Below, one piece after another: positions 1,440 to 22,691 of a stretch of DNA of 64,000 nucleotides. A model generated the notes under the pieces. The model made no database searches and was not told where the DNA came from. It saw only the letters and a list, made by a program, of their open reading frames with translations. This DNA is from Dendrobates tinctorius (Eukaryota). The DNA lies in the NCBI RefSeq assembly GCF_039654945.1, contig NW_027361792.1:5456001-5520000 (forward strand), read 5' to 3'. Made by a program: the position numbers and the translations under genes. Position 1 is the first letter of the stretch; each line of letters begins with the position of its first letter.

Positions 1440-2646
1440 AAACCTACAAAAGACAAAATGAAAAAAACCCTGCAGTAATTAAATAAGTCAAAAGCAAAAG
1501 TGCATTTAAATCATACAGAGTTCTTAGTAATACTGTATTTGATCAAACATAGCATAAAAGCCGTCCCACCATCGACAAGGTGACTCTGTGGTCGGGGCGG
1601 TCCTACCCTGTCTAGTATTAAAAACCTTATCATGTGTCAAAGTTGACGTCTGTGTGAATAAGGGCAGACAAGGACCGGGTTCCAACCACTGTAAGAACTC
1701 TGTATGATTTAAATGCACTTTTGCTTTTTACTTATTTAATTATAGCAGGGTTTTTTTTCATTTTTGTCTTTTGTAGGTTTTGTATGCTTTTTGGCCATGT
1801 CATAAAAAACCTACAAAAGACAAAATGAAAAAAACCCTGCAGTAATTAAATAAGTCAAAAGCAAAAGTGCATTTAAATCACATAGAGTTCTTAGTAATAC
1901 TGTATTTGATCAAGCATAGCATAAAAGCCGTCCCACCATTGACACGGTGACTCTGTGGTCGGGGCGGTCCTACACTGTCTAGTATTAAAAACCTTATCAT
2001 GTGTCAAAGTTGACGTCTGTGTGAATAAGGGCAGACAAGGACCGGGTCCCAACCACCGGACACCAGTCAGGGGAAGCCTTTAAAAACAATTTCCAGCTCA
2101 GGAGAGGGAGGCCACACTCCAGCTTGCACAGAATGCAAAAATACAGAGAAAAAACACAAAAATTGAGCTTGGTTTGAGTTGGTGCACATGCAGCATATAA
2201 ATGCATGTTCACGTGGCCAAAAAGCACAAAAAAACTACAAAAGACAAAAATGAAAAAACCTCCTGTAATAAAATAAGTAAAAAGCAAAAGTGCATTTAAA
2301 TCATACAGAGTTCTTACAGTGGTTGGGACCCGGTCCTTGTCTGCCCTTATTCACACAGACGTCAACGTTGACACATGATAAGGTTATTAATACTAGACCG
2401 TGTAGGACCGCCCCGACCACAGAGTCACCTTGTCGATGGTGGGACGGCTTTTATGCTATGTTTGATCAAATACAGTATTACTAAGAACTCTGTATGATTT
2501 AAATGCACTTTTGCTTTTGACTTATTTAATTACAGGAGTTTTTTTCATTTTGTCTTTTGTAGGTTTTTTATGCTTTTTGGCCATGTGAACATGCATTTAT
2601 ATGCTGCATGTGAACCAACTCAAACCAAGCTCAATTTTTGTGTTTT
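1440..2646. mobile_element. Composite inverted/tandem repeat insertion flanked by a 14-bp direct repeat
   Basis: Three copies of a ~165-bp core (two in one orientation, one inverted) with palindromic AT-rich arms; ACAGTGTTCATAAA at 1426-1439 and 2647-2660. Confidence 0.6.
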
Positions 2647-4168
2647 ACAGTGTTCATAAAGAGAAGGGAAAAATTATCCCCCCCCCCATGACAACCATGA
2701 TAATAAGAATCTATCTGGAGCAATCATGAATGCCAATGTCATACTAGCGGAGGTAAAGCTCCTCTCCTAAAGTTCTATCGGTATGTGCTCTGGTTTGTCA
2801 ATTTGTGCTGTCAAAAATGCAAGTACTTACGGCGGCAGCCTAAAAACCGGTAGTGCGAACACAGTCTGATTATTTCCTTGATATTTTTAGTGATAAATTA
2901 CAATAAAAAAATAATAAAATAAAAATACAATTAGAAATAAAAATAGGAAAAAAAAAAAAAAGAGATACTGATATATATATATTTTTTTGCAGAACTGTTG
3001 AAATAAAATTAATTAAAGAAAAACTAAAGAAAAGCTTTGTAGAGACAAATGACAATAAAACCTAAAATAAATAAGTTAATTAAATAAAGACACAATTAAA
3101 AATACAAATAAAACAAGCATTAAAAAGACTACCGTACTTAAAAAGTTGCAGTGCTTGTTTCCCCCATGTGAGAAAAAAAATAATAAAAAATGCCAATACT
3201 TCTGTCCTTTTTGTCTGAATTCAAACAAGCGTAAAAAATGGTCTGTTTTGCCTCCTAAAAAAAACAACGACATATTTTTCATGTTTTACGCTACTGTTAC
3301 ATCGGTATGTCCTCTGGTTTTACTTACAAATGGAAGATATGTTTTATGTCCTAAATAAAAAAAAAAAATCAAATCAATTTATGCCATTTTTGCAATAGAT
3401 TTGTAAAAAACAAAACAGAGTCCATGTGGTCTCCATTTTTTTTTTGGGGGGGGGGTGGGGGTGGCAGGTATTGAGTTCAAAGAACGAAGCTCGCCTGCAA
3501 ATTAGGGTTAACTAGTGCATGTTTCATTAGGAATTGTGCTTTCCGGGTTGTTTCTTTCCCTGCCATTTGCCACAGAGTGAGTTAACTGAGCATCCAACAG
3601 TGAGCACCTTCTCTTTGTAACCTTTCGTTCTGCCTTCTTCTGAGCTTCTTTGAGCTGATTTATGACTACATCAAAGTTGAATGTGCAGATAAATAAAGAG
3701 CCTGTAAAAGCCAAACGGTGCAAAACTTTTAAGGAAACCCAGTCACAAAATCCTGTTTATTGCAATGCATTTCTAATATTATACTGATATGTTTCTATCA
3801 CCAGGTTGGCCCAAATTTTCACTTTTGTGCTTCAATGACCAACTTCATCCTTTCTATACACAATCAATGCAATCCAATCAATAACTAATTCCAGGCTCAT
3901 AATATGTAAACAAAAATTTAAAAAAAAAGGTATAAAATGCAATATAAATCCTATAAAAATAAATTTTACTAGCACATAATAATTAAAACAGACAAGAGAC
4001 CTTTAAATTGAGTTTATAGCTATTACCCTCTCCCATTCATGAAGACGGACACCCAAATATTTAAAGGGACAGTAACATAAGGTTAGTACCGCCATGATAC
4101 AGTGATAACAAGGACAATGGGTCTAATTAGAGCAAAATTAATTCCCTCTTATGACTACTACCCCTATT

Positions 4169-4199
<31 letters not shown>

Positions 4200-5275
4200 C
4201 CACTAATATTGGTGTATTGATCATTGATTTGTACATGTGAATGTGTGGGTAGACAAAGTGCCCTCGTACTACCATTTCAGGCTCTGGATTAGGGGTCCGT
4301 TGCAGCTGCAACTTTTGCATGCCATGCACACTTAGCAAAATTTTTTTCCAGTAATTTTTGCAGAAAAATTAGACACATAATTTGCAAATCACTAAATGAA
4401 AATATAAACTGGATGGCGCTCACTTAAATAAAAAGAAAAAGTTTTATTGTAGCAATGCAATTTTACAATAGAAATAGTGACACCTACAGACCGTTTTATG
4501 TACAACACATTAAAAACAATAATTTAGAACCTGTCCTGTTACGGTTTCATCCTCCTGTTTTCACTGGATTTTACCAGTAAAACATATTGCAAAGGGGGGC
4601 AATGAATGAAACAACATGTAAAAAGCTTTGACATCACTTCTCGATATCACAAATGGTTAAAATTGCAAAGAGCTTGTAAAACAAGCAACGCTGCAATTCA
4701 CGTTCTCAAAAATATAGGGATTTTTATTTTTATGGTTTACTGTCTTGGTTACCAGTCACTGTGGCGGTCCATCAGCGGTGGTTGATTTCCTAAGTAATGA
4801 GCACAGCACTTACAAGCTCTTTCCAATAGAGCTTGTAAGTGCTGCTGTGAAGCTGGCATCCAGCCGGCCTCGGTGCCCCTGCACTCCAGAACCAAAGCTG
4901 CCTAATCTAGCAACATCAGAGCGCTCACAGATAGGGCCAGTGGCGCCACCATGCTGCTGATCTGAACTGTCAATCATCCCGCTGTCTATTGGGGTATAAA
5001 GACATCATAAAGGGGGCTCCGAGGAGCCATAAAGGAGAGGTGTCCCCTACAAGCAGCTCCAGGACCCTTTGAACATCCATCCATCTGAATGGTCGCCATG
5101 TACAGTTCCTCCAGTGGCTGTCATAAGGGATATTCCTGGCTTTCCGCAGCAAAATCTTCCCCCATTGATGGCGCTGGGATTCCCATTTTGACATCCACTT
5201 TAAATAGGATTTTTAATTAAAGGTCTAGAATGAATCCAGGTCCCCGTCTCGTCCCCATCTTCCCATATGTTGCCC

Positions 5276-5513
5276 TCACACTTCCCCGATGTTGTCAAAT
5301 CCCATGTTACTGTAGTGGGTCTTATAAAAGCTCAAATCCGGTTGAATCGCCGGGAGACCCTTAGCCGGCTTGACCACGTTGTCATAAATGACGTCCTTGC
5401 TCGCGTGACTAATACGTCGGTAAATACTGGTGGTGTTCCACGTGGGTACAGGGGCTTGGGTGGTCTCGGGTGCGTGAGTTCTCTTCTCTCCCATGCAGCA
5501 GATACATTTATTC
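5276..5513 (-). CDS. Link-receptor gene exon 8: cytoplasmic tail and stop
   Basis: ttttattccccag acceptor; NKCICCMGEKR...SIYRRI...VIYDNV...HYSNMGFDNIGEV*; ATTAAA about 60 nt downstream (5212-5217). Confidence 0.8.
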
Positions 5514-7462
5514 CTGGGGAATAAAAATCTATATGTCATGTTCAGAATGATCAGAAAGATTCTTATCTAAGAATTCTAATGAGAAACAGCGCCAGCCTTG
5601 GGCAGAGGTTGCAGCTGGTAATGCAGCTTAGCTCGTTTTATATCATTGCAATACCAGGCAAGACCTATCCTTAGGGGTGGCGCTGTTTCATGAAAAAAAA
5701 AACCCTCCAAAATATATGAAAGTAATAAAGGAGCATGTTCTATTCCAATCCACTCTATTAACGAAAGCAAGGAGTAGCTCCGACTGCCGGATAAAGCCAT
5801 ACAGGTTTTTCATGTTACTCACCCTCTCATGAAGGCAGCGGTTAGAAGTAATACCACAAATATGAAGGCAATGATGCACCCGATGGCGATTTTCTTCCAG
5901 GCTGTAAATAACAAGAAGCAGAAGGGTGAGGAGGAGCCATCAATTTCATGGGAATGCAGATTTTTGCAGGTTTCCGGTTCCCTGATAACAGGGCTCTGAT
6001 CACATTGGATCCTTCCATTGGAGATATATGGAAAGTGTATGGCCGGCGCCACTTTATAGGCATATAATGGCATGTGTGGCCCATAGGCTCCGCTTTACAC
6101 AGGAGCAATCTGTCCCAACGTGTTAAGGGGCAGTCCCGATCCGTTGCGTCATTGCTGAGAAATCAATACTTTTATCCATATGCAAATCAGACTGCAAGTG
6201 CACGGGACGTTGATAATGCACTTGCAGTCCACGACTCCTCTTCAGTTCTCCCTGTCCAGTGTCGTTCTCATCTGCTCGATTGGCAGCTGTTGTAAATGAT
6301 ATTATCTACAAAAAAAAATCATCTGTCTCTGCAGGCAATCGAGCCGTACTGCGTTGGGCAACTGCAGAGAAGCTGTGGACTGCAAGTGCACATGAAACCG
6401 CCCAGTGCACTTGCAGTCAAGTTTACATATGGATAAAAGTAAGGATTTCTCCGCAATAAAACGACCGATCGGGACCATATAGGTGTCCTTTTAATTGACC
6501 AATACATCGCTACCTTCCGTCGACCCCTCAAATGCTCTCTTTGGATATATTCAGCATCTGCAGAAGTTTTAGAGGCTCATATGCCGACTAGACACAGCAA
6601 AGGTAGCCGACGCGTAATCTAGAAACTCAGATAGGACACATCTATCACTTGTCACCAGGGTGGAACTAAATTGCTGACTGTTTCCTGAAGAATTTTTAAA
6701 ATACTTTGTTAATACAAATAGGAAATAGAAACCTAAAATAGATCAAAAACAGCACAAAAACATCAACGGAAAATAATGAAAAAAAAAAAAACAAAAAAAA
6801 CCTTGAACATGCTGTACATGGCTGAATGATGGCGCTGGGCAGGTGGCATAGATTTAGCGCCAAGGCCAGTCCTATATATGTGGCTATGCGCTCGGCGTAA
6901 TGTTTAATGTGGAATTATATAACATACATATATAAAAGCACTAAAAATAATAACAGGAACTTACTTCGATTATCTTTTGTCACGAGGACATCAGATACTG
7001 TAAGAGAACAAAACGCATTACACGATGTTCCTTGCACGGAGTTCATGACATCTTTACCATACGGATTCCTCGCAGGCAGGAGAAACATATACTAAGGCCA
7101 TGTTCCCATGACGCCTTCACGGTTTTATCAAAAATTTCTAAAATTGATGCAAAAACTATGAATTTTTTGACCGTGATTTTGCAAAATTGCATAAAAAAAA
7201 CCTTATTCACGTGACGCTTTTTCTGCTTTACAAGATTTCTTTGACTGCGTTCTCACATTGTGATCTAAAATCACATTCACACATTTCATTTTTTTCTTGT
7301 TTTTTTTTAACCCTTGGTGCATTTTTTTTTTTTAATCTGCAGCATGTCAATTCTTTCATCATTTTTTTAATGAAGTTTTTCTCCATTGAGATCAAAGTGG
7401 GATAGTACAAAAAGAAAAAGGATCAAAATATGCATCTGCGGTTTTCTTGCCACATGTAAAAG

Positions 7463-7498
<36 letters not shown>

Positions 7499-10400
7499 CC
7501 TATGTGTGAACAGGACAAAAACAATGCATTTGTTTCAAAACTCCAGACAAAAAAATAGTGCATCCAAAAAATGCATCATGTGCACAGACCTCTAAAGGGT
7601 GTAGATTAGCCCTAGATTGAGGGATCAGTATTACAGACCTATAGGATGGCCCTGAGAATGAGGTCAATGGCTAAATACACATACATCATTTTTTGGGGGG
7701 CGAGACTGAAACCTTAAAAGGGTCAATAGGTTTAGAAAATCTATTTTCATATATTGTGAATGGTGGATCCTGTGTTATCTACTGTATATAGAGGTGTTAT
7801 CAGTCATTGTACAGGAGGAGGAGGTGAGCTGTGACATCACCTATTGTGAATGGTGGATCATGTGTTATCTACTGTATATAGAAGTGTTATCAGTCATTTT
7901 ACAGGAGGAGGAGGAGGTGAGCTGTGACATCACCTATTGTGAATGGTGGATCCTGTGTTATTAACTGTATATAGAGATGTTATCAGTGATTGTACAGGAG
8001 GGGGAGGATGTGAGCTGTGACATCACCTATTGTGAATGCTGGCTCCTGTGTTGTTATTAGCTGTATATAGAGGTGTTATCAGTCATTGTACAGGAGGAGG
8101 AGGTGAGCTGTGACATCACCTATTGTGAATAGTGGATCCTGTGTTATCTACTGTATATAGAGGTGTTATCAGTCATTGTACAGGAGGAGGAGGTGAGCTG
8201 TGATATCACCTGTTGTGAATGGTGGATCCTGTATTATCTACTGTATATAGAGATGTTATCAGTCATTGTACAGGAGGAGGAGGTGAGCTGTGACATCACC
8301 TATTGTGAATAGTGGATCCTGTATTATCTCCAGTATCTAGAGGTATTATCAGTCATTGTTCAGGAGGAGGAGGTGAGCTGTGACAACACCTATTGTGAAT
8401 AGTGGATCCTGTGTTATCTATATATACGATAGATATTATCAGGTCATTTCCCGATGATAATTCTTGTACTTATTGATTGTCTGGTGAATACTTACAGGCT
8501 GGATTATAGCAGAAGGCTGAACCTTGACTTATCGTATCATCACAGGAATTCTGTTCAAAATTCCCGCCGCTCACCTTTCCCACTCCCCAATTATACCAGG
8601 CAAGACTGCTGGAAGAAAAAGTACCAGCATGGTCACACATCGTATATCGCACGGTGTTACTATATGACACATATAACATGTAGGGATATAGAGACACATG
8701 GCAGTTTTCTAAAAACAGACAAAAGCACAGTGCCCCAGCTGTCCACAGGTTGTGTGCGGTATTGCAGCTAAGCTCCATTCACTTCAATGGAGACCAGAGA
8801 CAAACTGTGGATCGAGTCGGTGCAGTTTCTGGAAGAGAGCAGTCAAGTCTTTTCCTAATTCAAGTCAACGTGTTGCTTTTGAAAAGAATGCTTGAAAAGT
8901 TAGGGCAACAGCCAAAGTTTGTTGCATTTTTAGGATAAATCAGTTTTATTAAGACATTTGGAGACAAGATGCCAGGGTTCCGGCTTTTGTTGACAACAAG
9001 ACGTCTGGCCATACTGGTTGTCAGGTTCACAGCTGTGACTTCTACAGAACATCTATCTGAGATACATGCTGAGGGTCTCAGTAGTTCTGGCAGTTGTGAA
9101 CCAGGAGGATCAGGATGAACAGCACAGAATACCTCTCGTTCTCACACAATGGATCACATCTTACCTGCTGTTTGTTATGAGACCTTTATTCTCCTCCATC
9201 TCCTCTTTGGTGGCTATGGTGAGTCCACTGCCTGTGCAGGTTTTGTTGGCGTTTTCATAGGATGGGACAAGACTGGTAGGTATAGGAAGTATCTGAATCA
9301 TCCCTGAATGTATGGAAAGACCACATTTCATAAATGAACTGGTCCGCTGTGCTCAAACTGGTCCGCTGCGCTCAAACTGGTCTGCTGCTCTCAAACTGAT
9401 CTGTTCTTCTCAAACTGGCCTGCTGTGCTCAAACCGGTCTGCTGCTCTCAAACTGGCCCAATGCTCTCAAACTAGTCTGCTATGCTCAAAATGGTCCACT
9501 GCTCTCAAACTCGCCTGCTGCGCCCAAACTGGCCCGCTGCTCTCAAGCTAGTCTGCTGTGCTCAAAATGGTCCACTGCTCTCAAACTCGCCTGCTGCGCC
9601 CAAACTGGCCCGCTGCTCTCAAACTAGTCTGCTGTGCTCAAAATGGTCCACTGCTCTCAAACTCGCCTGCTGCGCCCAAACTGGCCCGCTGCTCTCAAAC
9701 TGGTGGGCTGTACTCAAACTGGCCCGCTGCAATCAAACTAGTCTGCTGCGCTCAAAATGGTCTGCTGCGCTCAAACTCACCTGCTGTGCTCAAACTGGCC
9801 TGCTGCGCTCAAACTGGCCTGCTGCGCTCAAACTGGCCTGCTGCGCTCAAACTGGCCTGCTGCGCTCAAACTGGTCTGCTGCGCTCAAACTGGTCTGCTG
9901 CGCTCAAACTGGTCTGCTGTGCTCAAAATGGTCCACTGCTCTCAAACTCGCCTGCTGCGCCCAAACTGGCCCGCTGCTCTCAAACTAGTCTGCTGTGCTC
10001 AAAATGGTCCACTGCTCTCAAACTCGCCTGCTGCGCCCAAACTGGCCCGCTGCTCTCAAACTGGTGGGCTGTACTCAAACTGGCCCGCTGCAATCAAACT
10101 AGTCTGCTGCGCTCAAAATGGTCTGCTGCGCTCAAACTCACCTGCTGTGCTCAAACTGGCCTGCTGCGCTCAAACTGGCCTGCTGCGCTCAAACTGGCCT
10201 GCTGCGCTCAAACTGGCCTGCTGCGCTCAAACTGGCCTGCTGCGCTCAAACTGGCCTGCTGCGCTCAAACTGGCCTGCTGCGCTCAAACTGGTCTGCTGC
10301 GCTCAAACTGGTCTGCTGCGCTCAAACTGGTCTGCTGCGCTCAAAATGGTCCACTGCTCTCAAACTCGCCTGCTGCGCCCAAACTGGCCCGCTGCTCTCA

Positions 10401-13400
10401 AACTAGTCTGCTGTGCTCAAAATGGTCCACTGCTCTCAAACTCACCTGCTGCTCTCAAACTGACCCGCTGCTCTCAAACTGGTGGGCTGTACTCAAACTG
10501 GCCCGCTGCACTCAAACTAGTCTGCTGTGCTCAAAATGGTCCACTGCTCTCAAACTGGCCTGCTGCGCTCAAACTGGCCTGCTGTGCTCAAACTGGCCTG
10601 CTGTGCTCAAACTGGCCTGCTGTGCTCAAACTGGCCTGCTGCTCTCAAACTGGTCTGCTGTGCTCAAACTGGTCTGCTGCGCTCAAACTGGTCTGCTGCG
10701 CTCAAACTGGTCTGCTGCGCTCAAACTGGTGGGCTGTACTCAAACTGGCCCGCTGCACTCAAACTAGTCTGCTGTGCTCAAAATGGTCCACTGCTCTCAA
10801 ACTGGTCTGCTGTGCTCAAACTGGCCTGCTGCGTTCAAACTGACCTGCTGCGCTCAAACTGGTCTGCTGCTCTCAAACTGGTCTGCTGTGTTCAGACTGG
10901 TCTGCTGCACTCAAACTGGTCTGCTGTACTCAAACTGGTCTGCTGCACTCAAAATGGTCTGCTGCTCTCAAACTGGCCTGCTGCTCTCAAACTGGCCTGC
11001 TGCCCTCAAACTGGCCTGCTGCTCTCAAACTGGCCTGCTGCTCTCAAACTGGCCTGCTGCTCTCAAACTGGCCTGCTGCGCTCAAACTGGCCTGCTGCGC
11101 TCAAACTGGCCTGCTGCGCTCAAACTGGCCTGCTGCGCTCAAACTGGCCTGCTGCGCTCAAACTGGTCTGCTGCGCTCAAACTGGCCTGATGCGCTCAAA
11201 CTGGCCTGATGCGCTCAAACTGGTCTGCTGCCCTCAAACTGGTCTGCTGCCCTCAAACTGGTCTGCTGCCCTCAAACTGGTCTGCTGCCCTCAAACTGGT
11301 CTGCTGCCCTCAAACTGGCCCACTGCTCTCAAACTGGTGGGCTGTACTCAAACTAGCCCGCTGCACTCAAACTGGCCTGCTGTGCTCAAAATGGTCCACT
11401 GCTCTCAAACTCGCCTGCTGCGCTCAAACTGTCCTGCTGCTCTCAAACTGGTCTGCTGTGTTCAGACTGGTCTGCTGCACTCACACTGGTCTGCTGCGCT
11501 CAAACTGGTCTGCTGCGCTCAAACTGGTCTGCTGCGCTCAAACTGGTCTGCTGCGCTCAAACTGGCCCACTGCTCTCAAACTGGTGGGCTGTGCTCAAAC
11601 TGGTCTGCTGTGCTCAAACTTGCCCGCTGCACTCAAACTGGTCTGCTGTGCTCAAACTGGCCTGCTGCGTTCAAACTGGTCTGCTGCGCTCAAACTGGTC
11701 TGCTGCGCTCAAACTGGTCTGCTGCGCTCAAACTGGTCTGCTGCGCTCAAACTGGTCTGCTGCGCTCAAACTGGCCTGCTGTGCTCAAACTGGCCTGCTG
11801 CGCTCAAACTTGCCCGCTGCGCTCAAACTGGCCTGCTGCGCTCAAACTGGCCTGCTGCGCTCAAACTGGCCTGCTGCGCTCAAACTGGCCTGCTGCGCTC
11901 AAACTGGCCTGCTGCGCTCAAACTGGCCTGATGCGCTCAAACTGGCCTGATGCGCTCAAACTGGCCTGATGCGCTCAAACTGGTCTGCTGCCCTCAAACT
12001 GGTCTGCTGCCCTCAAACTGGTCTGCTGCCCTCAAACTGGTCTGCTGCCCTCAAACTGGTCTGCTGCCCTCAAACTGGCCCACTGCTCTCAAACTGGTGG
12101 GCTGTACTCAAACTAGCCCGCTGCACTCAAACTGGCCTGCTGTGCTCAAAATGGTCCACTGCTCTCAAACTCGCCTGCTGCGCTCAAACTGTCCTGCTGC
12201 TCTCAAACTGGTCTGCTGTGTTCAGACTGGTCTGCTGCACTCACACTGGTCTGCTGCGCTCAAACTGGTCTGCTGCGCTCAAACTGGTCTGCTGCGCTCA
12301 AACTGGTCTGCTGCGCTCAAACTGGCCCACTGCTCTCAAACTGGTGGGCTGTGCTCAAACTGGTCTGCTGTGCTCAAACTTGCCCGCTGCACTCAAACTG
12401 GTCTGCTGTGCTCAAACTGGCCTGCTGCGTTCAAACTGGTCTGCTGCGCTCAAACTGGTCTGCTGCGCTCAAACTGGTCTGCTGCGCTCAAACTGGTCTG
12501 CTGCGCTCAAACTGGCCTGCTGTGCTCAGACTGGTCTGCTGCACTCAAAATGGTCTGCTGCGCTCAAACTGGTCTGCTGCGCTCAAACTGGTCTGCTGCG
12601 CTCAAACTGGTCTGCTGCACTCAAACTGGTCTGCTGTGTTCAGACTGGTCTGCTGCACTCAAACTGGTCTGCTGTACTCAAACTGGTCTGCTGTGTTCAG
12701 ACTGGTCTGCTGCACTCAAAATGGTCTGCTGCTCTCAAACTGGCCTGCTGCTCTCAAACTGGCCTGCTGCTCTCAAACTGGCCTGCTGCTCTCAAACTGG
12801 CCTGCTGCTCTCAAACTGGCCTGCTGCTCTCAAACTGGCCTGCTGCGCTCAAACTGGCCTGCTGCGCTCAAACTGGCCTGCTGCGCTCAAACTGGCCTGC
12901 TGCGCTCAAACTGGTCTGCTGCGCTCAAACTGGCCTGATGCGCTCAAACTGGTCTGCTGCCCTCTAACTGGTCTGCTGCCCTCTAACTGGTCTGCTGCCC
13001 TCTAACTGGTCTGCTGCCCTCAAACTGGTCTGCTGCCCTCAAACTGGTCTGCTGCCCTCAAACTGGTCTGCTGCCCTCAAACTGGTCTGCTGCCCTCAAA
13101 CTGGTCTGCTGCCCTCAAACTGGTCTGCTGCCCTCAAACTGGCCCGCTGCTCTCAAACTGGTGGGCTGTACTCAAACTAGCCCGCTGCACTCAAACTGGC
13201 CTGCTGTGCTCAAAATGGTCCACTGCTCTCAAACTCGCCTGCTGCGCTCAAACTGTCCTGCTGCTCTCAAACTGGTCTGCTGTGTTCAGACTGGTCTGCT
13301 GCACTCACACTGGTCTGCTGCGCTCAAACTGGTCTGCTGCGCTCAAACTGGTCTGCTGCACTCAAACTGGCCCACTGCTCTCAAACTGGTGGGCTGTGCT

Positions 13401-16400
13401 CAAACTGGTCTGCTGTGCTCAAACTTGCCCGCTGCACTCAAACTGGTCTGCTGTGCTCAAACTGGCCTGCTGCGTTCAAACTGGTCTGCTGCGCTCAAAC
13501 TGGTCTGCTGCGCTCAAACTGGTCTGCTGCGCTCAAACTGGTCTGCTGCGCTCAAACTGGTCTGCTGCGCTCAAACTGGCCTGCTGCGCTCAAACTGGCC
13601 TGCTGCGCTCAAACTCACCTGCTGCTCTCAAACTGGTCTGCTGCGCTCAAACTGGTCTGCTGCGCTCAAACTGGCCTGCTGCGCTCAAACTGGTCTGCTG
13701 CGCTCAAACTGGCCTGCTGCGCTCAAACTGGCCTGCTGCGCTCAAACTGGCCTGCTGCGCTCAAACTGGCCTGCTGTGCTCAGACTGGCCTGCTGTGCTC
13801 AGACTGGCCTGCTGTGCTCAGACTGGTCTGCTGTGCTCAGACTGGTCTGCTGCTCTCAAACTGGCCTGCTGCGCTCAAACTGGCCTGCTGCGCTCAAACT
13901 GGCCTGCTGCGCTCAAACTGGTCTGCTGCGTTCAAACTGGCCTGCTGCGCTCAAACTGGTCTGCTGCGCTCAAACTGGCCTGCTGCGCTCAAACTGGCCT
14001 GCTGCGCTCAAACTCACCTGCTGCTCTCAAACTGGTCTGCTGCGCTCAAACTGGTCTGCTGCGCTCAAACTGGTCTGCTGCGCTCAAACTGGTCTGCTGC
14101 GCTCAAACTGGCCTGCTGCGCTCAAACTGGCCTACTGCGCTCAAACTGGCCTGCTGCGCTCAGACTGGCCTGCTGTGCTCAGACTGGCCTGCTGTGCTCA
14201 GACTGGTCTGCTGCTCTCAAACTGGTCTGCTGCGCTCAAACTGGCCTGCTGCGCTCAAACTGGCCTGCTGCGTTCAAACTGGCCTGCTGCGCTCAAACTG
14301 GTCTGCTGCGCTCAAACTGGCCTGCTGCGCTCAAACTGGCCTGCTGCGCTCAAACTCACCTGCTGCTCTCAAACTGGTCTGCTGTGTTCAGACTGGTCTG
14401 CTGCACTCAAACTGGTCTGCTGTGTTCAGACTGGTCTGCTGCACTCAAAATGGTCTGCTGCACTCAAAATGGTCTGCTGCTCTCAAACTGGCCTGCTGCT
14501 CTCAAACTGGCCTGCTGCTCTCAAACTGGCCTGCTGCTCTCAAACTGGCCTGCTGCTCTCAAACTGGCCTGCTGCTCTCAAACTGGCCTGCTGCGCTCAA
14601 ACTGGCCTGCTGCGCTCAAACTGGCCTGCTGCGCTCAAACTGGCCTGCTGCGCTCAAACTGGTCTGCTGCGCTCAAACTGGCCTGCTGCGCTCAAAATGG
14701 CCTGCTGCGCTCAAAATGGCCTGCTGCGCTCAAAATGGCCTGCTGCGCTCAAACTGGCCTGCTGCCCTCAAACTGGCCTGCTGCCCTCAAACTGGCCTGC
14801 TGCCCTCAAACTGGTCTGCTGCCCTCAAACTGGTCTGCTGCCCTCAAACTGGTCTGCTGCCCTCAAACTGGCCCACTGCTCTCAAACTGGTGGGCTGTAC
14901 TCAAACTAGCCCGCTGCACTCAAACTGGCCTGCTGTGCTCAAAATGGTCCACTGCTCTCAAACTCGCCTGCTGCGCTCAAACTGTCCTGCTGCTCTCAAA
15001 CTGGTCTGCTGTGTTCAGACTGGTCTGCTGCGCTCAAACTGGTCTGCTGCGCTCAAACTGGTCTGCTGCGCTCAAACTGGCCCACTGCTCTCAAACTGGT
15101 GGGCTGTGCTCAAACTGGTCTGCTGTGCTCAAACTTGCCCGCTGCACTCAAACTGGTCTGCTGCGCTCAAACTGGCCCACTGCTCTCAAACTGGTCTGCT
15201 GTGCTCAAACTGGCCTGCTGCGCTCAAACTGGCCTGCTGCGCTCAAACTGGCCTGCTGCGTTCAAACTGGCCTGCTGCGCTCAAACTGGTCTGCTGCGTT
15301 CAAACTGGCCTGCTGCGCTCAAACTGGTCTGCTGCGCTCAAACTGGCCTGCTGCGCTCAAACTGGTCTGCTGCGCTCAAACTGGCCTGCTGTGCTCAAAC
15401 TGGCCTGCTGCGCTCAAACTGGCCTGCTGCGCACAAACTGGTCTGCTGCGCTCAAACTGGTCTGCTGCGCTCAAACTGGTCTGCTGTGCTCAAAATGGTC
15501 TGCTGTGCTCAAACTGGCCTGCTGCTCTCAAACTGGCATGCTGCGCTCAAACTGGTCTGCTGTGCTCAAACTGGTCTGCTGCGCTCAAACTGGCATGCTG
15601 CGCTCAAACTGGTCTGCTGCGCTCAAACTGGCATGCTGCGCTCAAACTGGCCTGCTGCGCTCAAACTGGCCTGCTGCGCTCAAAATGGTCTGCTGCGCTC
15701 AGACTGGCCTGCTGCGCTCAGACTAGTGAACCTGTCTGCATCCTACTGACCTCGATACATCCTGTAAGTAGAAAGTTTCGTCTACTATATCAGCAGCGCA
15801 AGGGAAGCTGGCAGGTTGTCTGAGAAGATAATAGTTCTGCAGATACCTCTGTGGATGGACTCACCTGAGGTGCTATTGACACAGAATGTGGATCTGATGT
15901 TCGGACAGTCTCTGATCAAAATACCAACATTATAATCAGAACACGCTTTAAATGGTGTCAGACGGAGCATGACAAGCCTCCTCTCCTCTATCCAGCCCCA
16001 CCTGGTTTAAAAAAGAAAGTTACATATCAGCTTTACTGTACATTTTCCCCCACGAAACAAAACCTCCCACCTCTCATTGCTGCAAACGATAGAGACTAAG
16101 GCTATGTGCACACGGTGCGGATCCTCCCGCCGATTTTTCCTGCGGATTTCTTCCTTTTTTTTGCAGTTTTACTGCGGTTTTCCACCTGCGGATTTGTAGA
16201 ATGGAGCAGGTGAAAAACTGCAGCAAAACCGCACAAAAGAAGTCACATGCTGCTTTTTATTTTCCGCACAAAAACAGCGCGGAAAAATCCGCAGCATGTG
16301 CACCGCGCTTTTTTTTTTTTTACATACGCTATAATGGTACTGTACATCACCTGCAGTTCTGCTGCGGATCCGCAGTAGAAACCGCACCGTGTGCACAGAG

Positions 16401-19400: not shown

Positions 19401-22400
19401 TTATGAAGATGGGGACAACATTTGCCCTTTTCCAATCTTCTGGTACTTCTCCTGTTCTCCACGATTTTTCAAAGATTCTGGCTAGTGGTTTTGCAATTTC
19501 CTCTGATAACTCTTTCAGTACTCTAGGATGTAATTCTTCTGTACCAGGAGATTGAAATTCAGGTAAATTCGCTAAGTGTTCCTTCACCACCTCTCTGTTT
19601 ATGGATAGCATGGATTCTTTTATTCCTTTGATGGCACCGTGAAGATCAGTCGATGTTACAATTGCTTTCTTAGAGAACACAGAAGCAAAATAGGAATTGA
19701 AAAGTTCAGCCTTCTCAACATCATTTTTGAACACTTCACCCTTTTCATCCTGTAAAGATCAGGTCATAGTTTTCCAACCCACTTAAATAGGACCGGTCTT
19801 TTTAATCTGGTGTAAATACCGCTGTTCTCCTGAATCCGACAACGTTTTTCTTTTGTTCCCGTGACTCTCTGTTCCTGAGATATGGCCTCCTCTTCACTAT
19901 ATATAAATTTAGCCTTAATAGACAACTGGGTGTGGTCCTCAAGTAGACGCCCACAAGGAACATTGTAGACTCTGCCCATTTGGCTAAAAATTCCAGATTT
20001 ATAAACAGGAAAGAGGAGGAGATATCTCAGGAACAGAGAGGCGCAGGAACACAAGAAAAACTTCTCCGGATTCAGGAGAACAGCGGCATTTACATCGGGT
20101 AATTTTTTTTTGTTACATATTTATGGCAGATGACAGATCTTCTGTAAAGCATTTATCACTTATCCACATAAATTTTGGAGGTCTGATGAAATTCCCCAGA
20201 ATTAATTTAATGGAATAAAAAAGTATTTATTAATACAGAGATGTCAGGAAAGGTAGTAAGTTCTCTCCTGACATTTCTGTATGCGAGTGGCGCACAGGGC
20301 GGCACAAATCTGACACACAGCCACGGTCATAAGCAAATTACGGGTTTTCCCATATTGTCGGCCATACTTACTTGCAGAACTCGTAGCCCTTTGTAAACGC
20401 AACAGTGATATTCTCCAGTGTCGCCAGTCTGCTGTAGTGCGCGGCACAGGCCACTTTGGCGCCATCATAGTCTACTGAGATATTATTTGGCATGAACACT
20501 CCGGAAATTACTGGTAGGAAAAAAAAAATTAAGCATATTGACATCATTGGTTTTTTTTTTAAATAAATGTTAAGGGTTAACAATGCAGGAGTTGGTTTAC
20601 ATTTCCCCGTAGAGCCTCTACAGGAGAAACAGAGCATTACAAGCTCCCATTGAAATCTATGGACTCCCTGCGCAATGAATGGACGAAACGGAAAGAAAAG
20701 AAGGTTCATGAGCACAAGATTTAGCACATTGACGGAGAGATGCTGAAATGCATATGTTAGCGTAGCGCCACACTTGGCTGTGTTTGGTATTGCAGCTGAT
20801 CTACAATGCCTGATGCAATCTATGAGCAGAAGTGGAGCTGATATATGGGGACAATCGGCCTCCAGGACCCCTCTTTCCTGGGAATAGTTCTGGCTGTCTC
20901 TTCTGTGCCGTACGCAGCCTTAAACCACCCGTTACCCCATCGTTCTCAGAATCGTAAGGGTTCTCTGATGTTGGACCGCCACTGATTGTAAAATGATGGC
21001 CAATCCTAGAAATATGCTATTGCTTTATAAGATGGAAATAAACATTTTAACTACTTCTTGAACGGTGACGAGCGTGTATGTTGGGAGTGGTAGTAAGAAG
21101 CGAGATCAGGAGTGAAGCATACACCATTCACGGTCCGCACCGGCTGTGTTATACAGCAGCGATCGGAGCTAGCTCTGATCGCTGCTATTTAGCCACAAAG
21201 CAGAGCAATCGCGCCACGTAATTGTTACGGGGGCCCATCGCATGGTCATTTTTTCTATATACCGTAACACAGTCATGTCACAGAATCCAAAATAATCAAA
21301 ACAACTTCAGGTCCCATAAGAGAACTTAAAAATAAATTAAAAATGTACAAAAATATATATAAAATATATAAACACACATGTAAATCACTCTCATAAAAAC
21401 GAGACCCAAAAAAAGAATAGATGAGTTATGGTTTATTTATTTTTTCACGATTTTATCGCACTTGGAATTTTTTTCCTGTTTTTTTTCTCACATTATATGG
21501 TACAATGAATGGCACTATTAAAAAACTGCAATTATATACCTATAACTATATAAAAAAAAAAGTTACGGCTTTGTGAAAAAGGGGAGTAAAAGACGAAAGC
21601 GCAAAAACGCGGTCTTTTTATTTCCCTGTATTTGTATCAGAATAAAGTTGATTGTCCCCCAAACAGAGATCCCCCCCAGCGACCACATACATAGGTACGC
21701 TGGGTCGGGCTTAGCATATACCTATTTTCTACGGGAAGTCAGAAGTTTTCTGCTGACAGTGTCCTCCACCAGCAGCTTATCTTCTCTGAGCACAAAAGGA
21801 TTGGGCATGTTAAAATCTAACAGCCTGATCATTTGCCAAAGGGGGAAAAAAAAAACCTTATGACACCCCTTCCCATTTCTGTTTGGCTGGTTTAAGACCC
21901 CACTGAGTCTTTGAGCCTGACTGCTTAGTTGTTTGGGGCCTTTTTGTCCCAGGGCGGGGGTCTGTGATGACCCATCACGGTTCCCCATTTTGGCGTTTTC
22001 TCCAAAGTCTCCATTGCTTTAGCCACGGAGTATATAATAAAGAAAGAGATGCAAGGTTATTAGACAGGAACCTAATATATAAGATAGACCTGAATGGGAG
22101 GTAATAAGTGTATAAAACACCGGCATACGCCTTTAAGAAGTTACCCTTTAAGGGCTCATGCGGAGTGGGGTTGCAGTATTATTAGTGAGGCAGAGATGGC
22201 GGGTTTTTTTCGTAAGCCATTCTGTCTATTGCAAAACTATAAGAAAATGCTCTTGGGCTCTAATGCAAAATCTATAAAGAGGGGCCGCATTACAACTGGA
22301 TTTTTTATGTGCCGGCATATAATTGGTTCAACCTGGGGCCCAGGAGGTAAGGGGGCCACTAACACCTCCAATGCAGGTGGAATTGTGCATTATGTGGAGC

Positions 22401-22691
22401 TATTGGACTACAGAAGGGCCCATATATTGTTATTTTGCACAGGGGCTTCTTCTGTCTGTGTCCGCCAGTGTGTAGAGGGGCTTTTAGCTCCCCTCTGTTT
22501 TAATTGTTACCTCTGCACCCAATATAGCATAGTCCCTTGGTTACAGCCACAGTTGCCAAAATAGGGTAGAAAAAAAGCAGAGTGCTACGGCCAAGACCTG
22601 GTGGGATCGTCTCACCTTGTATGGGGTCTGCAGACGATGAGATTCCGATGACCGAGATGAGAACGCAGAGGTGTAAGGTTGGGGGAATCAT
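5276..22691 (-). CDS. Uncharacterised type I membrane protein with two tandem Link modules (CD44/LYVE1-like), 8 coding exons, 317 aa
   Basis: Exons 22691-22616, 20510-20372, 16001-15865, 9303-9165, 8608-8496, 6997-6965, 5901-5823, 5513-5276. All introns are GT-AG with compatible phases; total 954 nt, open to TGA. Protein: MIPPTLHLCVLISVIGISSSADPIQ VISGVFMPNNISVDYDGAKVACAAHYSRLATLENITVAFTKGYEFCK WGWIEERRLVMLRLTPFKACSDYNVGILIRDCPNIRSTFCVNSTS GMIQILPIPTSLVPSYENANKTCTGSGLTIATKEEMEENKGLITNSS SLAWYNWGVGKVSGGNFEQNSCDDTISQGSAFCYNPA LSDVLVTKDNR TWKKIAIGCIIAFIFVVLLLTAAFMRG NKCICCMGEK...FDNIGEV. Confidence 0.85.
5823..5901 (-). CDS. Link-receptor gene exon 7: transmembrane helix
   Basis: WKKIAIGCIIAFIFVVLLLTAAFMRG; 79 nt, phase 1->2; ttatttacag acceptor, GG|GTGAGT donor. 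Confidence 0.85.
6122..6495. mobile_element. Palindromic MITE (TTAA-flanked, Kolobok/T2-like)
   Basis: Imperfect inverted arms (tacttttatccatatg / catatggataaaagta); TTAA at both ends. Confidence 0.55.
6965..6997 (-). CDS. Link-receptor gene exon 6: 33-nt stalk micro-exon
   Basis: gttttgttctcttacag acceptor and A|GTAAGT donor; frame-preserving phase 1->1; encodes LSDVLVTKDNR. Confidence 0.65.
7752..8420 (+). repeat. ~90-bp satellite, ~7 copies
   Basis: Unit GTGAGCTGTGACATCACCTATTGTGAATGGTGGATCCTGTG...CAGGAGGAGGAG. Confidence 0.92.
8496..8608 (-). CDS. Link-receptor gene exon 5: divergent Link module 2, C-half
   Basis: SLAWYNWG...SAFCYNP ends with a Link-type AFCY motif; pyrimidine tract plus CAGCAG acceptor, T|GTAAGT donor. 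Confidence 0.8.
9165..9303 (-). CDS. Link-receptor gene exon 4: divergent Link module 2, N-half
   Basis: 139 nt, phase 1->2, same size and phase as exon 2; SYENANKTC....IATKEEM aligns with DYDGAKVAC....LATLENI; cattcag acceptor, AG|GTAAGA donor. Confidence 0.8.
9337..15725. repeat. 19-bp minisatellite (CTCAAACTGGYCTGCTGCG)n, ~335 copies, filling intron 3 of the Link gene
   Basis: Visible periodicity; produces the spurious CCAQTGLLRSNW ORFs in all three + frames. Confidence 0.97.
15865..16001 (-). CDS. Link-receptor gene exon 3: Link module 1, C-half
   Basis: WGWIEERRLVMLRLTPFKAC...VGI...TFCVNS aligns with the Link C-half (cf. CD44 YGFIEGHVVIPRIHPNSIC...GV...TYCFNAS); aaaccag acceptor, G|GTGAGT donor. 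Confidence 0.9.
16097..16405. mobile_element. Palindromic MITE (T2/Kolobok-like); related copies near 7093-7595, 25329-25762 and 46467-46808
   Basis: TIRs aggctatgtgcacacggtgcgg / ccgcaccgtgtgcacagagcct. Confidence 0.65.
16451..17985 (-). mobile_element. CR1 LINE, 5'-truncated, RT domain nearly intact (one frameshift near 17020)
   Basis: ORF 16869-17933 has QHGF, DFSKAFD, GVPQGSVLG, FADD and LVRPHLEY; continues in ORF 16669-16986 (RRLRGDLI, TRGH); 3' (CTATGTTA)n tail at 16451-16470. Confidence 0.93.
18042..19757 (-). mobile_element. Older, degraded CR1 LINE of a different subfamily
   Basis: Fragmented ORF2 (KAELFNSYFASVF, VPEDWKRANVVPI, NYRPVS, LVRPHLEY); 3' ATTCTGTGATTCTATGA tail typical of CR1. 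Confidence 0.9.
19780..20145. mobile_element. Palindromic non-autonomous DNA transposon; second copy at about 49265-49595
   Basis: Inverted arms ccgctgttctcctgaatccg / cggattcaggagaacagcgg in both copies. Confidence 0.65.
20372..20510 (-). CDS. Link-receptor gene exon 2: Link module 1, N-half
   Basis: Poly-T tract plus ctaccag acceptor; GVF...Y..A...C.....LAT......A...GYEFCK matches the Link consensus; donor AA|GTAAGT, phase 2 as in CD44. Confidence 0.9.
22616..22691 (-). CDS. Link-receptor gene coding exon 1: signal peptide
   Basis: gtcagcATG start; MIPPTLHLCVLISVIGISSSADPIQ has a hydrophobic core and small-residue cleavage region; donor G|GTGAGA, phase 1. Confidence 0.75.

What the first reader, a model, noticed from the sequence alone, without database searches (positions are those of the whole stretch)
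5276..5513. Tail of the Link receptor carries paired immunoreceptor tyrosine motifs and a palmitoylation-like cluster
Seen: juxtamembrane KCICC, then SIYRRI and VIYDNV. Both fit the ITIM consensus (S/I/V/L-x-Y-x-x-I/V/L), and together they form YRRI-x8-YDNV with ITAM-like spacing. YDN and YSN fit the Grb2 YxN motif and YSNM fits the PI3K p85 YxxM motif. Known: CD44 signals through ERM/ankyrin binding rather than ITIMs. Inference: a Link ectodomain coupled directly to SH2-domain signalling, as in an immune receptor. Short motifs can arise by chance.
Basis: partly seen in the sequence, partly recalled or inferred. Interest (0 to 1): 0.7.

Follow-up and report, generated by a model that had tools for sequence, protein, structure and literature searches.

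The report
Conserved tyrosine tail of frog Link receptor
The stretch is the real, transcribed last coding exon of an uncharacterised poison-frog membrane receptor with two Link (hyaluronan-binding type) modules; its cytoplasmic tail carries cysteines and tyrosine motifs conserved across amphibians and old fish lineages, which points to phosphotyrosine or sorting signals rather than classical ITIMs.

Summary
Window 5276-5513 (minus strand) is exon 8, the last coding exon, of an 8-exon gene. The 316-aa product equals residues 68-383 of a Dendrobates tinctorius RefSeq "uncharacterized protein". It has a signal peptide, two Link-like modules, a TM helix and a 79-aa disordered tail.

Spliced RNA contigs from four runs of two species join the TM exon to this exon with GT-AG ends. 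The "different last exon" refutation therefore fails.

Relatives occur in all three amphibian orders, bichirs and sturgeon/paddlefish, with a looser relative in lamprey. In bichir and paddlefish the gene also lies just downstream of FBXO3, and in paddlefish just upstream of CD59. No amniote or teleost protein with this tail was among the listed hits.

Across 25 amphibian sequences the invariant tail residues are G238, N239, C243, C244, W263, N264, Y269, Y305 and N307.
- The ITIM consensus holds in only 14/25 (Y269) and 6/25 (Y281).
- A strict ITAM holds in 6/25.
- Y281-x-N holds in 19/25.
- The C-terminal Y-x-N holds in every member found with a complete tail.

My reading is a palmitoyl-anchored docking tail like those of LAT or CD28 (Grb2-type YxN, and YxNM in most frogs), with endocytic sorting as the main rival. 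No binding has been shown. The scan also noted the whole gene on this same window.

The parts
22616..22691 (-). Exon 1 coding part: ATG at 22691 and the signal peptide (25 aa + 1 nt, phase 1).
   Evidence: tblastn of the Ranitomeya orthologue P0003. GT donor seen. All orthologues start at this Met. RefSeq isoforms start 67 aa further upstream, at ATG 22892.
20372..20510 (-). Exon 2: N-terminal half of Link module 1 (139 nt).
   Evidence: Pfam Xlink E=1e-4 on this half alone. AG and GT sites seen. tblastn.
15865..16001 (-). Exon 3: C-terminal half of Link module 1 (137 nt).
   Evidence: tblastn. Splice-site scan. The assembled CDS translates to P0010[68-383].
9165..9303 (-). Exon 4: N-terminal half of Link-like module 2 (139 nt, same length and phases as exon 2).
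8496..8608 (-). Exon 5: C-terminal half of Link-like module 2. It has a NAGNAG tandem acceptor (8608 or 8605) that explains RefSeq isoforms X1 (384 aa) and X2 (383 aa).
   Evidence: Sequence. RNA joint 6997/8496 in four runs. Isoform lengths.
6965..6997 (-). Exon 6: 33-nt micro-exon encoding the stalk (LSDVLVTKDNR).
   Evidence: RNA joints 5901/6965 (X1, X17) and 6997/8496 (all four runs). tblastn.
5823..5901 (-). Exon 7: transmembrane helix (residues about 213-237).
   Evidence: Sequence. RNA joint 5512/5822 in all four runs. AF2 helix 210-238.
5276..5513 (-). Exon 8 (the finding): the 78-aa cytoplasmic tail from N239 to V316, plus the stop codon at 5276-5278.
   Evidence: AF2 pLDDT is below 50 over 239-316, i.e. 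predicted disordered.
5495..5512 (-). Juxtamembrane N239-K-C241-I-C243-C244. G238, N239, C243 and C244 are invariant; C241 is F in 19/25. Candidate S-palmitoylation site.
   Evidence: Palmitoylation is inferred from the position next to the TM helix, not tested.
5435..5440 (-). W263-N264, an invariant pair of unknown role within P-T-W-N-x-T.
5411..5428 (-). S-I-Y269-R-R-I. The Tyr is invariant in 25 amphibians (F in Ascaphus). Y-x-x-I/V/M holds in 23/25; the ITIM fit holds in 14/25.
5375..5392 (-). V-I-Y281-D-N-V. A Tyr is present in all 25, and Y-x-N in 19/25. The ITIM fit holds in 6/25. It lies 12 residues after Y269 in neobatrachian frogs and Discoglossus, and 11 in Pelodytes, Spea, Ascaphus, the caecilians and both salamanders (Xenopus has no clear equivalent).
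5324..5326 (-). Y301 (F-Y-K-T-H). Y in 22/25; F in Bufo.
5294..5314 (-). Y305-S-N307-M-G-F-D, the C-terminal motif Y-x-N-x-x-[F/Y]-[D/E]. Y and N are invariant in every family member found with a complete tail, including bichir, sturgeon, paddlefish and a lamprey relative (MYDNIAYED).
4443..5275 (-). 3' UTR (about 0.83 kb) with an AATAAA signal at 4448-4443.
   Evidence: RNA contigs cover 4462-5512 without a gap. Sequence.

Best explanation
Window 5276-5513 (minus strand) encodes the intrinsically disordered cytoplasmic tail of an uncharacterised type I receptor of Dendrobates tinctorius. The protein has a signal peptide, two tandem Link-like modules, an 11-aa stalk and a TM helix. The gene family is old: it sits between FBXO3 and CD59 in paddlefish.

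My proposed mechanism is as follows. The invariant Cys pair next to the membrane is S-acylated and holds the tail at the inner leaflet. When the ectodomain is clustered by a glycosaminoglycan-type ligand, Src-family kinases phosphorylate the conserved tyrosines. The invariant C-terminal Y-x-N, and the mostly conserved Y281-x-N, then dock Grb2-family SH2 adaptors. In most frogs the Y-x-N-M form could also dock PI3K p85, as in CD28. The Y269/Y281 pair, 11-12 residues apart, may bind a tandem-SH2 protein in lineages where it is a canonical ITAM.

The tail would thus work like a transmembrane adaptor or co-stimulatory tail (LAT, NTAL, SIT or CD28 type), not like a classical ITIM receptor.

Shown here: the exon, its splicing and transcription, the protein architecture, conservation and synteny. 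Inferred: acylation, phosphorylation, the partners and the ligand.
For: Exon use:
- Spliced contigs join 5513 to 5823 in four runs of two species.
- The assembled CDS equals P0010[68-383].

Architecture:
- Pfam Xlink scores 51 bits against a cut-off of 27.
- The AF2 model shows two alpha/beta modules, a TM helix and a disordered tail.
- Foldseek hits are aggrecan G1, LYVE-1, CD44 and TSG-6.

Conservation:
- Invariant tail residues in 25 amphibians are G238, N239, C243, C244, W263, N264, Y269, Y305 and N307.
- Tail identity is about equal to or higher than that of Link module 2 in most comparisons, which fits purifying selection.
- Y-x-N at the C-terminus is kept in caecilians, salamanders, bichirs, sturgeon/paddlefish and lamprey. 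It never becomes F-x-N in the last copy.
- A second Y-x-N (Y281) without an aromatic at N+3 is kept in 19/25. This favours YxN itself as the selected unit.

Orthology:
- FBXO3 lies directly upstream in Dendrobates (ApaG exon), bichir and paddlefish, where CD59 follows.

Established knowledge (mine, not tested here): pY-x-N is the Grb2/Gads SH2 motif, pY-x-x-M the p85 motif, CD28 uses YMNM, and LAT-type adaptors carry juxtamembrane palmitoylated Cys plus several YxN.
Against: - There is no biochemical evidence of phosphorylation, acylation or any partner.
- The tissue or cell type of expression is unknown, because run descriptions are coded or not on record.
- The C-terminal motif also fits [F/Y]-x-N-x-x-[F/Y], a PTB or endocytic signal.
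- Y269-x-x-hydrophobic fits an AP-2 sorting signal equally well.
- Y269 is F in Ascaphus.
- Y281-x-N is lost in Bufo, Hyperolius, Mixophyes, Pelodytes, Spea and Xenopus.
- Transmembrane adaptors have tiny ectodomains, unlike this protein.
- Some of the motif-level conservation could reflect general constraint on the tail.
Confidence: 0.5

Rival explanations
1. The tail is an endocytic or sorting tail. The conserved tyrosines act unphosphorylated: Y269-x-x-I/V/M as an AP-2 YxxPhi signal, and the C-terminal Y-x-N-x-x-[F/Y] as an [F/Y]xNxx[Y/F] signal read by PTB adaptors of the Dab2, ARH or Numb kind. The protein would then be a clearance receptor for hyaluronan or another glycosaminoglycan, comparable to stabilin-2/HARE.
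For: Y269 is followed by a hydrophobic residue at +3 in 23/25 sequences, while the ITIM -2 position is not kept. The aromatic at N+3 of the C-terminal motif is kept: F in 18 and Y in 7 of 25, and Y or F in salamanders, sturgeon and lamprey. From my own knowledge, stabilin-2/HARE internalises hyaluronan through NPLY and Y-based motifs, and LDLR uses FxNPxY.
Against: The residue after N is never Pro in any member. Bichir has L at N+3. A second conserved YxN (Y281) has no aromatic at N+3, which a PTB signal does not explain. Strict invariance of Tyr (never Phe) at 305 in all taxa fits a need for phosphorylation better, since FxNPxY signals tolerate Phe at the first position.
Confidence: 0.27
2. 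One reading: a paired ITIM (or ITIM/ITSM) inhibitory tail, or a bona fide ITAM, recruits SHP-1/SHP-2/SHIP or Syk, making this a classical immunoreceptor.
For: The window sequence has two exact ITIM fits (SIYRRI and VIYDNV). At least two fits arise in only 0.65% of shuffles. The Y-to-Y spacing is fixed at 11-12 residues in nearly all members. A strict ITAM is present in 6/25, namely Lithobates and its Logan relative, Pyxicephalus, Gastrophryne and Rhinoderma.
Against: Only 2/25 sequences have both ITIM fits. Y269 fits in 14/25 and Y281 in 6/25. Non-neobatrachian frogs, caecilians, salamanders and fishes fit neither ITIM nor strict ITAM. The window's own second motif ends in V, which is non-canonical for an ITAM. 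The residues under the strongest constraint, N at +2 of Y281 and of Y305, are not part of either consensus.
Confidence: 0.13
3. The motifs are chance matches. The tail is conserved for another reason, such as binding an unknown partner through the P-T-W-N and P-x-I-R-P-E-M segments or a structural role, and the tyrosines have no special function.
For: Short motifs are common, and the motif set was chosen after seeing the sequence. Non-tyrosine segments are just as conserved: W263 and N264 are invariant, and I294 and P296 are kept in 24/25. No Pfam family or solved structure matches the tail.
Against: Y269 and Y305 share first rank among 79 tail positions for conservation. Y305 and N307 together persist across lineages as far apart as frogs and ray-finned fishes, and in a lamprey relative.
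Confidence: 0.1

Closest known systems
CD44 and LYVE-1 (single-pass Link-module hyaluronan receptors)
   Same: Type I membrane topology with an N-terminal Link module carrying the four canonical cysteines. They are the best solved-structure matches to the model's modules (LYVE-1 TM 0.62, CD44 about 0.48, 28-30% identity). The best PDB sequence hit of exon 2 is CD44.
   Different: This protein has two tandem Link-like modules, and no mucin-like stalk (11 residues only). The tail shows no detectable similarity to the CD44 or LYVE-1 tails. The basic ERM-binding cluster of CD44 is not seen (my knowledge of CD44). The gene lies next to FBXO3/CD59, not at the CD44 or LYVE1 loci.
Lectican / HAPLN G1 domains (tandem Link modules, e.g. 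aggrecan G1)
   Same: Two consecutive Link modules. The top Foldseek hit is aggrecan G1 bound to hyaluronan (E=6e-6). After the family itself, the next best profile hits are mostly long multi-stretch proteins of lectican size. Several databases even name family members "aggrecan core protein-like".
   Different: There is no Ig (V-set) module. The protein is membrane-anchored rather than secreted. Module 2 is shortened and lacks the C2 cysteine of the inner C2-C3 disulfide pair. The relative orientation of the modules in the model differs (rmsd about 18 A over 209 columns).
Transmembrane adaptor / co-stimulatory tails (LAT, NTAL/LAT2, SIT, CD28)
   Same: Juxtamembrane Cys pair, a disordered tail, and several Y-x-N motifs. 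One is Y-x-N-M, as in the YMNM of CD28. This is a functional resemblance recalled from established knowledge.
   Different: No sequence homology was found: the tail-only search returns only Link-family proteins. This protein has a large folded ligand-binding ectodomain. The Cys motif is xxCC rather than the CxxC of LAT. No binding data exist.
Stabilin-2/HARE (endocytic hyaluronan receptor with a Link module)
   Same: A Link module on a single-pass receptor whose tail works through tyrosine- and N-x-x-Y-type motifs (my knowledge).
   Different: Stabilin-2 is a protein of more than 2500 aa with EGF and fasciclin domains and one Link module. No tail similarity was detected.

Membership tests
Link-module (Xlink, PF00193) superfamily | Sequence match to the Xlink profile above Pfam's gathering score | tested here: met
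   51.3 bits against a cut-off of 27 for the 316-aa protein, matching module 1 at residues 36-100. Exon 2 alone gives E=1e-4. Module 2 is not detected by Pfam.
Link-module (Xlink, PF00193) superfamily | Four cysteines forming the C1-C4 and C2-C3 disulfides | tested here: met
   In module 1, C47 (C1), C92 (C3) and C112 (C4) are invariant and C71 (C2) is kept in at least 90% of 25 sequences. Module 2 keeps only C140 and C196 as invariant; it has no C2, and C185 varies. Module 2 is therefore a degenerate Link-like module.
Link-module (Xlink, PF00193) superfamily | Alpha/beta Link fold | tested here: met
   The AF2 model has pLDDT 76-92 over most of the ectodomain. Foldseek hits with probability 1.00 are LYVE-1, CD44, TSG-6 and aggrecan G1.
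Link-module (Xlink, PF00193) superfamily | Hyaluronan binding | not testable with these tools
   By the CD44 alignment and my knowledge of CD44, K72-W73 stand where CD44 has R78-Y79, and no basic residue stands at R41. The ligand is unknown.
ITIM-bearing inhibitory receptors | (I/V/L/S)-x-Y-x-x-(I/V/L) conserved in orthologues | tested here: not met
   The window has two fits. Across 25 amphibians Y269 fits in 14, Y281 fits in 6, and both fit in 2. Discoglossus, Pelodytes, Spea, Xenopus and both caecilians fit neither. By eye, the salamander, bichir and sturgeon tails do not fit either.
ITIM-bearing inhibitory receptors | Recruitment of SHP-1, SHP-2 or SHIP on phosphorylation | not testable with these tools
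   Needs phosphopeptide binding assays.
ITAM-bearing activating receptors | Y-x-x-(L/I)-x6-8-Y-x-x-(L/I) | tested here: not met
   The window has YRRI-x8-YDNV, with V at the second +3. The strict form occurs in 6/25 only. The spacing itself is conserved.
Grb2-docking adaptor-like tails (LAT/SIT/CD28 type): works-like comparison, not homology | One or more conserved Y-x-N motifs | tested here: met
   Y305-x-N307 holds in 25/25 amphibians and in all distant members with a complete tail. Y281-x-N holds in 19/25.
Grb2-docking adaptor-like tails (LAT/SIT/CD28 type): works-like comparison, not homology | Juxtamembrane cysteines available for palmitoylation | tested here: inconclusive
   The invariant C243-C244 lie 6-7 residues after the TM helix. 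Acylation itself was not tested.
Grb2-docking adaptor-like tails (LAT/SIT/CD28 type): works-like comparison, not homology | Minimal ectodomain (adaptor with no ligand binding) | tested here: not met
   About 185 residues of folded Link modules. It is therefore a receptor with an adaptor-like tail, not a member of that class.
CD44 family | CD44-type cytoplasmic tail | tested here: not met
   BLASTP of the tail against a teleost CD44 gives E=6.2, which is not significant. Against lungfish LYVE-1 it gives E=0.06, and that match falls outside the LYVE-1 tail.

The most novel reading that the evidence does not exclude
This is an ancient vertebrate glycosaminoglycan-sensing immunoreceptor. Its tandem Link modules are wired directly to LAT/CD28-like Grb2/PI3K signalling, with a true ITAM in ranoid frogs. 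It lies between FBXO3 and CD59, has been retained in amphibians and non-teleost fishes, and was lost in amniotes and teleosts. That would make it a previously unrecognised class of matrix- or damage-sensing activating receptor.
Probability: 0.2. Interest if true: 0.75.

Novelty: new variant of a known kind. Interest (0 to 1): 0.55.

Why it matters
The known membrane hyaluronan receptors act through cytoskeletal linkers or endocytosis: CD44, LYVE-1 and stabilin-2. A Link-module receptor whose tail is built from conserved YxN, YxNM and ITAM-like tyrosines would be a direct route from matrix glycosaminoglycans to SH2 signalling.

The family is old. It is syntenic with FBXO3 in bichir and with FBXO3 and CD59 in paddlefish. 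It is annotated only as "uncharacterized", or mislabelled "aggrecan-like", "LYVE1-like" or "CD44". No amniote or teleost member was found here. It is therefore a candidate lineage-lost receptor that can be studied in Xenopus (LOC116410282) or axolotl.

For annotation, the data also argue that the RefSeq start codon of the Dendrobates models is 67 codons too far upstream.

Tried and rejected
1. My first gene model was wrong. It had five exons and one Link module, splicing exon 2 directly to 8608 and exon 5 directly to the TM exon. All phases matched, but orthologous proteins and RNA joints show eight exons, two modules and a 33-nt micro-exon. The phases matched because the two modules are exon-structure duplicates.

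2. Pfam on the tail alone gave nothing. The PDB sequence search on the tail gave only chance hits to acyl carrier protein at E about 1.

3. A tail-only word search for the tail attached to other ectodomains returned only Link-family proteins. That search needs shared 5-residue words, so it is not sensitive to distant tails.

4. Four literature searches found no paper on this family: Link domain plus ITAM or amphibian terms, paralogues, hyaladherin evolution, and six LOC identifiers.

5. I could not learn the tissue of expression. Run, sample and organism names are coded and the library descriptions are not on record.

6. The lamprey relative is not next to FBXO3; its neighbour is a DENN-domain gene. 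Its orthology is left open.

7. The lungfish (P0034, P0185) and Rhinatrema (P0029) multi-module relatives lack this tail.

8. An LC3-interacting F-D-x-I reading of the C-terminus was rejected, because several species have FDTT.

Full report
**Observation.** Read on the minus strand, 5513-5279 encodes (G)NKCICC...SIYRRI...VIYDNV...FYKTHYSNMGFDNIGEV, followed by a stop at 5278-5276. An AG acceptor sits at 5515-5514. About 310 nt upstream in transcript sense lies a hydrophobic exon, 5823-5901, with a GT donor. The reading frame closes across the junction (GG|G), giving ...AAFMRG-NKCICC.

**Gene model.** My first model spliced exon 2 straight to 8608 and had one Link module. All phases fitted, but the model was wrong. 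A word search seeded on the Link exon returned 310-316-aa frog proteins. tblastn of the Ranitomeya orthologue against the window then located eight coding exons. Their GT-AG boundaries were fixed:
- 22616-22691
- 20372-20510
- 15865-16001
- 9165-9303
- 8496-8605 (or 8608)
- 6965-6997
- 5823-5901
- 5276-5513

The spliced CDS is 951 nt. Its 316-aa product is identical to residues 68-383 of XP_073397885.1, a Dendrobates tinctorius "uncharacterized protein isoform X2", so the window is from that frog. Isoform X1 is one residue longer, which fits the NAGNAG acceptor at 8608/8605. RefSeq starts both isoforms at an in-frame ATG at 22892. All orthologues start at the Met of 22691, which heads a signal peptide. 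The X1 RNA contig has only about 140 nt of exon 1. The 67-aa N-terminal extension is therefore probably an annotation artefact.

**Transcription and the last exon.** Read laying on 2800-8700 (5901 letters) placed spliced contigs from four runs:
- Two runs of organism A, which is near-identical to the window (contigs of 1836 and 1800 nt).
- Two runs of organism B, a close relative (contigs of 1779 and 575 nt).

All four carry the joint 5512/5822 with CT..AC ends, which is GT..AG on the minus strand. All four also carry 6997/8496. The two organism-A runs carry 5901/6965 as well, which revealed the 33-nt micro-exon. The contigs continue without a gap from 5512 down to 4462-4494. An AATAAA signal lies at 4448-4443. 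No listed joint links the TM exon to any other acceptor. Contigs cannot give expression level or strand, and the tissue is not on record.

**The protein.** Pfam Xlink is passed at 51.3 bits against a cut-off of 27. The AlphaFold2 model, built on a 25-sequence alignment, has mean pLDDT 67.7, with 76-92 over most of the ectodomain. It shows two alpha/beta modules, a helix at 210-238, and pLDDT below 50 for 239-316. Foldseek against the PDB returns aggrecan G1 with hyaluronan, LYVE-1, CD44 and TSG-6 Link modules at probability 1.00.

Module 1 keeps the four canonical cysteines. Module 2 keeps only the outer pair as invariant and is shorter. The two modules are encoded by exon pairs of 139+137 nt and 139+110 nt with the same phases, which points to an internal duplication. 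This agrees with the scan's other note on this window (s1-364455: "two tandem Link modules").

**Distribution and orthology.** A profile of nine frog proteins found the family in Neobatrachia, Pelobatoidea, Discoglossus, Xenopus tropicalis, Rhinophrynus and two caecilians. The exhaustive profile search, with names, added:
- Ascaphus and Bombina
- salamanders (Pleurodeles, Ambystoma)
- bichirs (Erpetoichthys, Polypterus)
- sturgeons and paddlefish (Huso, Acipenser, Polyodon)
- a sea-lamprey protein
- multi-module relatives in lungfish and Rhinatrema that lack this tail

All are named "uncharacterized", or mislabelled "aggrecan core protein-like", "LYVE1-like" or "CD44 antigen". Among the 150 best representatives, no amniote or teleost protein has this tail or its C-terminal motif. 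Direct inspection of those genomes was not possible.

Synteny is as follows. In the window, an FBXO3 ApaG exon lies upstream on the same strand, at 33383-33823 (DUF525, E=7e-10). In bichir, an F-box/SMI1_KNR4/DUF525 gene ends about 10 kb upstream on the same strand. In paddlefish the order is FBXO3-like, then this gene, then CD59, all on one strand. The lamprey gene has a DENN-domain neighbour instead, so its orthology is open. From memory, human FBXO3 and CD59 are neighbours at 11p13 with no such gene between them. This was not tested.

**The tail across species.** In the 25-sequence amphibian alignment, the invariant tail residues are G238, N239, C243, C244, W263, N264, Y269, Y305 and N307. 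P261, I294 and P296 are kept in 24/25 and H304 in 23/25. Mean identity to the window residue over the tail is 57%. Y269 and Y305 share first rank of 79 positions. Y301 is Y in 22/25, and is F in Bufo. Y281 is Y in 19/25 columns, and five of the other six carry a Y one column away (Xenopus three columns away). Tail identity to the window protein is similar to or higher than that of Link module 2 in most comparisons.

Motif by motif:
- Y269-x-x-(I/V/M) holds in 23/25, but the ITIM -2 residue is present in only 14/25. In older lineages -2 is mostly G.
- Y281 fits an ITIM in 6/25. Both sites fit in only 2/25: Dendrobates and Gastrophryne.
- A strict ITAM holds in 6/25: Lithobates and its Logan relative, Pyxicephalus, Gastrophryne and Rhinoderma.
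- Y281-x-N holds in 19/25.
- Y305-x-N holds in 25/25.

In the wider tail alignment, the C-terminal motif Y-x-N-x-(G/A/S)-(F/Y/L)-(D/E) is present in salamanders (YDNLGY), caecilians (YDNLSY), bichir (YDNLAL), sturgeon/paddlefish (YINTAF, YSNAAF) and lamprey (YDNIAY). Ascaphus has F at the Y269 position. Sturgeons carry two copies of the H-[Y/F]-x-N-x-G-F-[D/E] unit. In organism B's transcripts, the changes listed within the tail exon alter three residues (S to N, YDNV to YDNM, L to M) and leave all four tyrosines intact.

**Chance.** In 200,000 composition-preserving shuffles of the tail, at least 2 ITIM fits occur in 0.65%, an ITAM-like pair in 1.0% and at least 2 YxN in 1.8%. The motif list was chosen after seeing the sequence, so these are only indicative. 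The argument rests on conservation.

**Interpretation.** The tail is cytoplasmic, since it follows an N-terminal signal peptide, disulfide-bonded modules and a single TM helix. It is predicted disordered and is under constraint at a few short motifs. This is the pattern of a linear-motif docking tail. What selection has kept is the following:
- the Cys pair beside the membrane
- W-N
- a Tyr with a hydrophobic +3
- a Tyr 11-12 residues later that usually has N at +2
- a C-terminal Tyr that always has N at +2

By established knowledge (not tested here), pY-x-N is the signature of Grb2-family SH2 domains and pY-x-x-M that of PI3K p85. CD28 combines both in YMNM. LAT-type adaptors combine palmitoylated juxtamembrane cysteines with several YxN sites. 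I therefore read the tail as a LAT/CD28-like docking tail on a Link-module receptor (confidence about 0.5).

The main rival (about 0.27) is that the same residues are unphosphorylated sorting signals: YxxPhi for AP-2 and [F/Y]xNxx[F/Y] for PTB adaptors. The protein would then be a clearance receptor. The conserved aromatic at N+3 supports this. The absence of Pro after N, the second YxN without that aromatic, and the strict Tyr at 305 argue against it.

Pure chance or some other constraint gets about 0.1. The readings are not mutually exclusive.

**Comparison with known systems.** The ectodomain is a member of the Link-module superfamily by profile, cysteines and fold, all tested and met. It is not a CD44 or LYVE-1 orthologue: it has a different locus, two modules and an unrelated tail. 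It resembles lectican/HAPLN G1 in having tandem modules, but lacks the Ig module and is membrane-bound. The tail has no detectable homologue outside the family. The similarity to LAT, SIT or CD28 is functional analogy only. No paper on the family was found.

**Verdict.**
"Paired ITIMs" does not survive the conservation test.
- The gene models exist in public databases but are uncharacterised. The combination of tandem Link modules with a conserved YxN tyrosine tail, and the gene's apparent absence from amniotes and teleosts, make it a new variant of a known kind.
- Interest is moderate (0.55).

Noticed in passing
window 9337-15724: A 6.4-kb satellite of a 19-nt unit, about 336 copies at 87% match and GC about 0.57. 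It fills most of the intron between exons 3 and 4 of the Link receptor gene. On the plus strand it creates long spurious ORFs with a 19-aa period.
   Followed up: partly
window 7752-8420: A 90-nt tandem repeat (7.3 copies) in the intron between exons 5 and 6. RNA/DNA contigs pile up here at very high summed depth (thousands) with many rearranged joints. It is therefore a dispersed, abundant repeat family in both frog species.
   Followed up: partly
window 16669-19734 (minus strand): Reverse-transcriptase ORFs of CR1/L2-type LINE fragments, the longest 354-371 aa at 16869-17984. They lie in the intron between exons 2 and 3.
   Followed up: no
window 22692-22892 (minus strand): RefSeq isoforms X1 and X2 of this gene start at an in-frame ATG at 22892, adding 67 residues ahead of the signal peptide. 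Orthologues all start at the Met of 22691, and the RNA contig carries only about 65 nt upstream of it. The extension is probably an annotation artefact.
   Followed up: partly
window 8605-8610 (minus strand): A NAGNAG tandem acceptor (cag|cag) at the start of exon 5. It accounts for the one-residue difference between RefSeq isoforms X1 (384 aa) and X2 (383 aa).
   Followed up: partly
window 33383-33823 (minus strand): An FBXO3 exon encoding part of the ApaG/DUF525 domain (E=7e-10). FBXO3 lies upstream of the Link receptor gene on the same strand, the same arrangement as in bichir (L001) and paddlefish (L003, where CD59 follows).
   Followed up: yes
window 1511-1718, 1878-2052 (minus) and 2290-2497 (plus): Three copies of a repeat of about 200 nt, two in one orientation and one inverted. 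They give near-identical 53-64-aa ORFs and look like a short interspersed or MITE-like element downstream of the gene.
   Followed up: no
P0174 (Polyodon spathula isoform X2), locus L003: The predicted paddlefish isoform X2 (404 aa) ends shortly after the Y269-equivalent region and lacks the C-terminal YxN motifs. Alternative tail exons may therefore exist in some species.
   Followed up: no
Acipenser ruthenus proteins P0046, P0176-P0183: The sterlet has many near-identical short paralogues of 209-210 aa. Each has one Link-like half-module, a TM helix and a tail with HYSNHGFE plus EYSNAAFD. Most lie on one 117-Mb contig, which indicates a local gene expansion.
   Followed up: no
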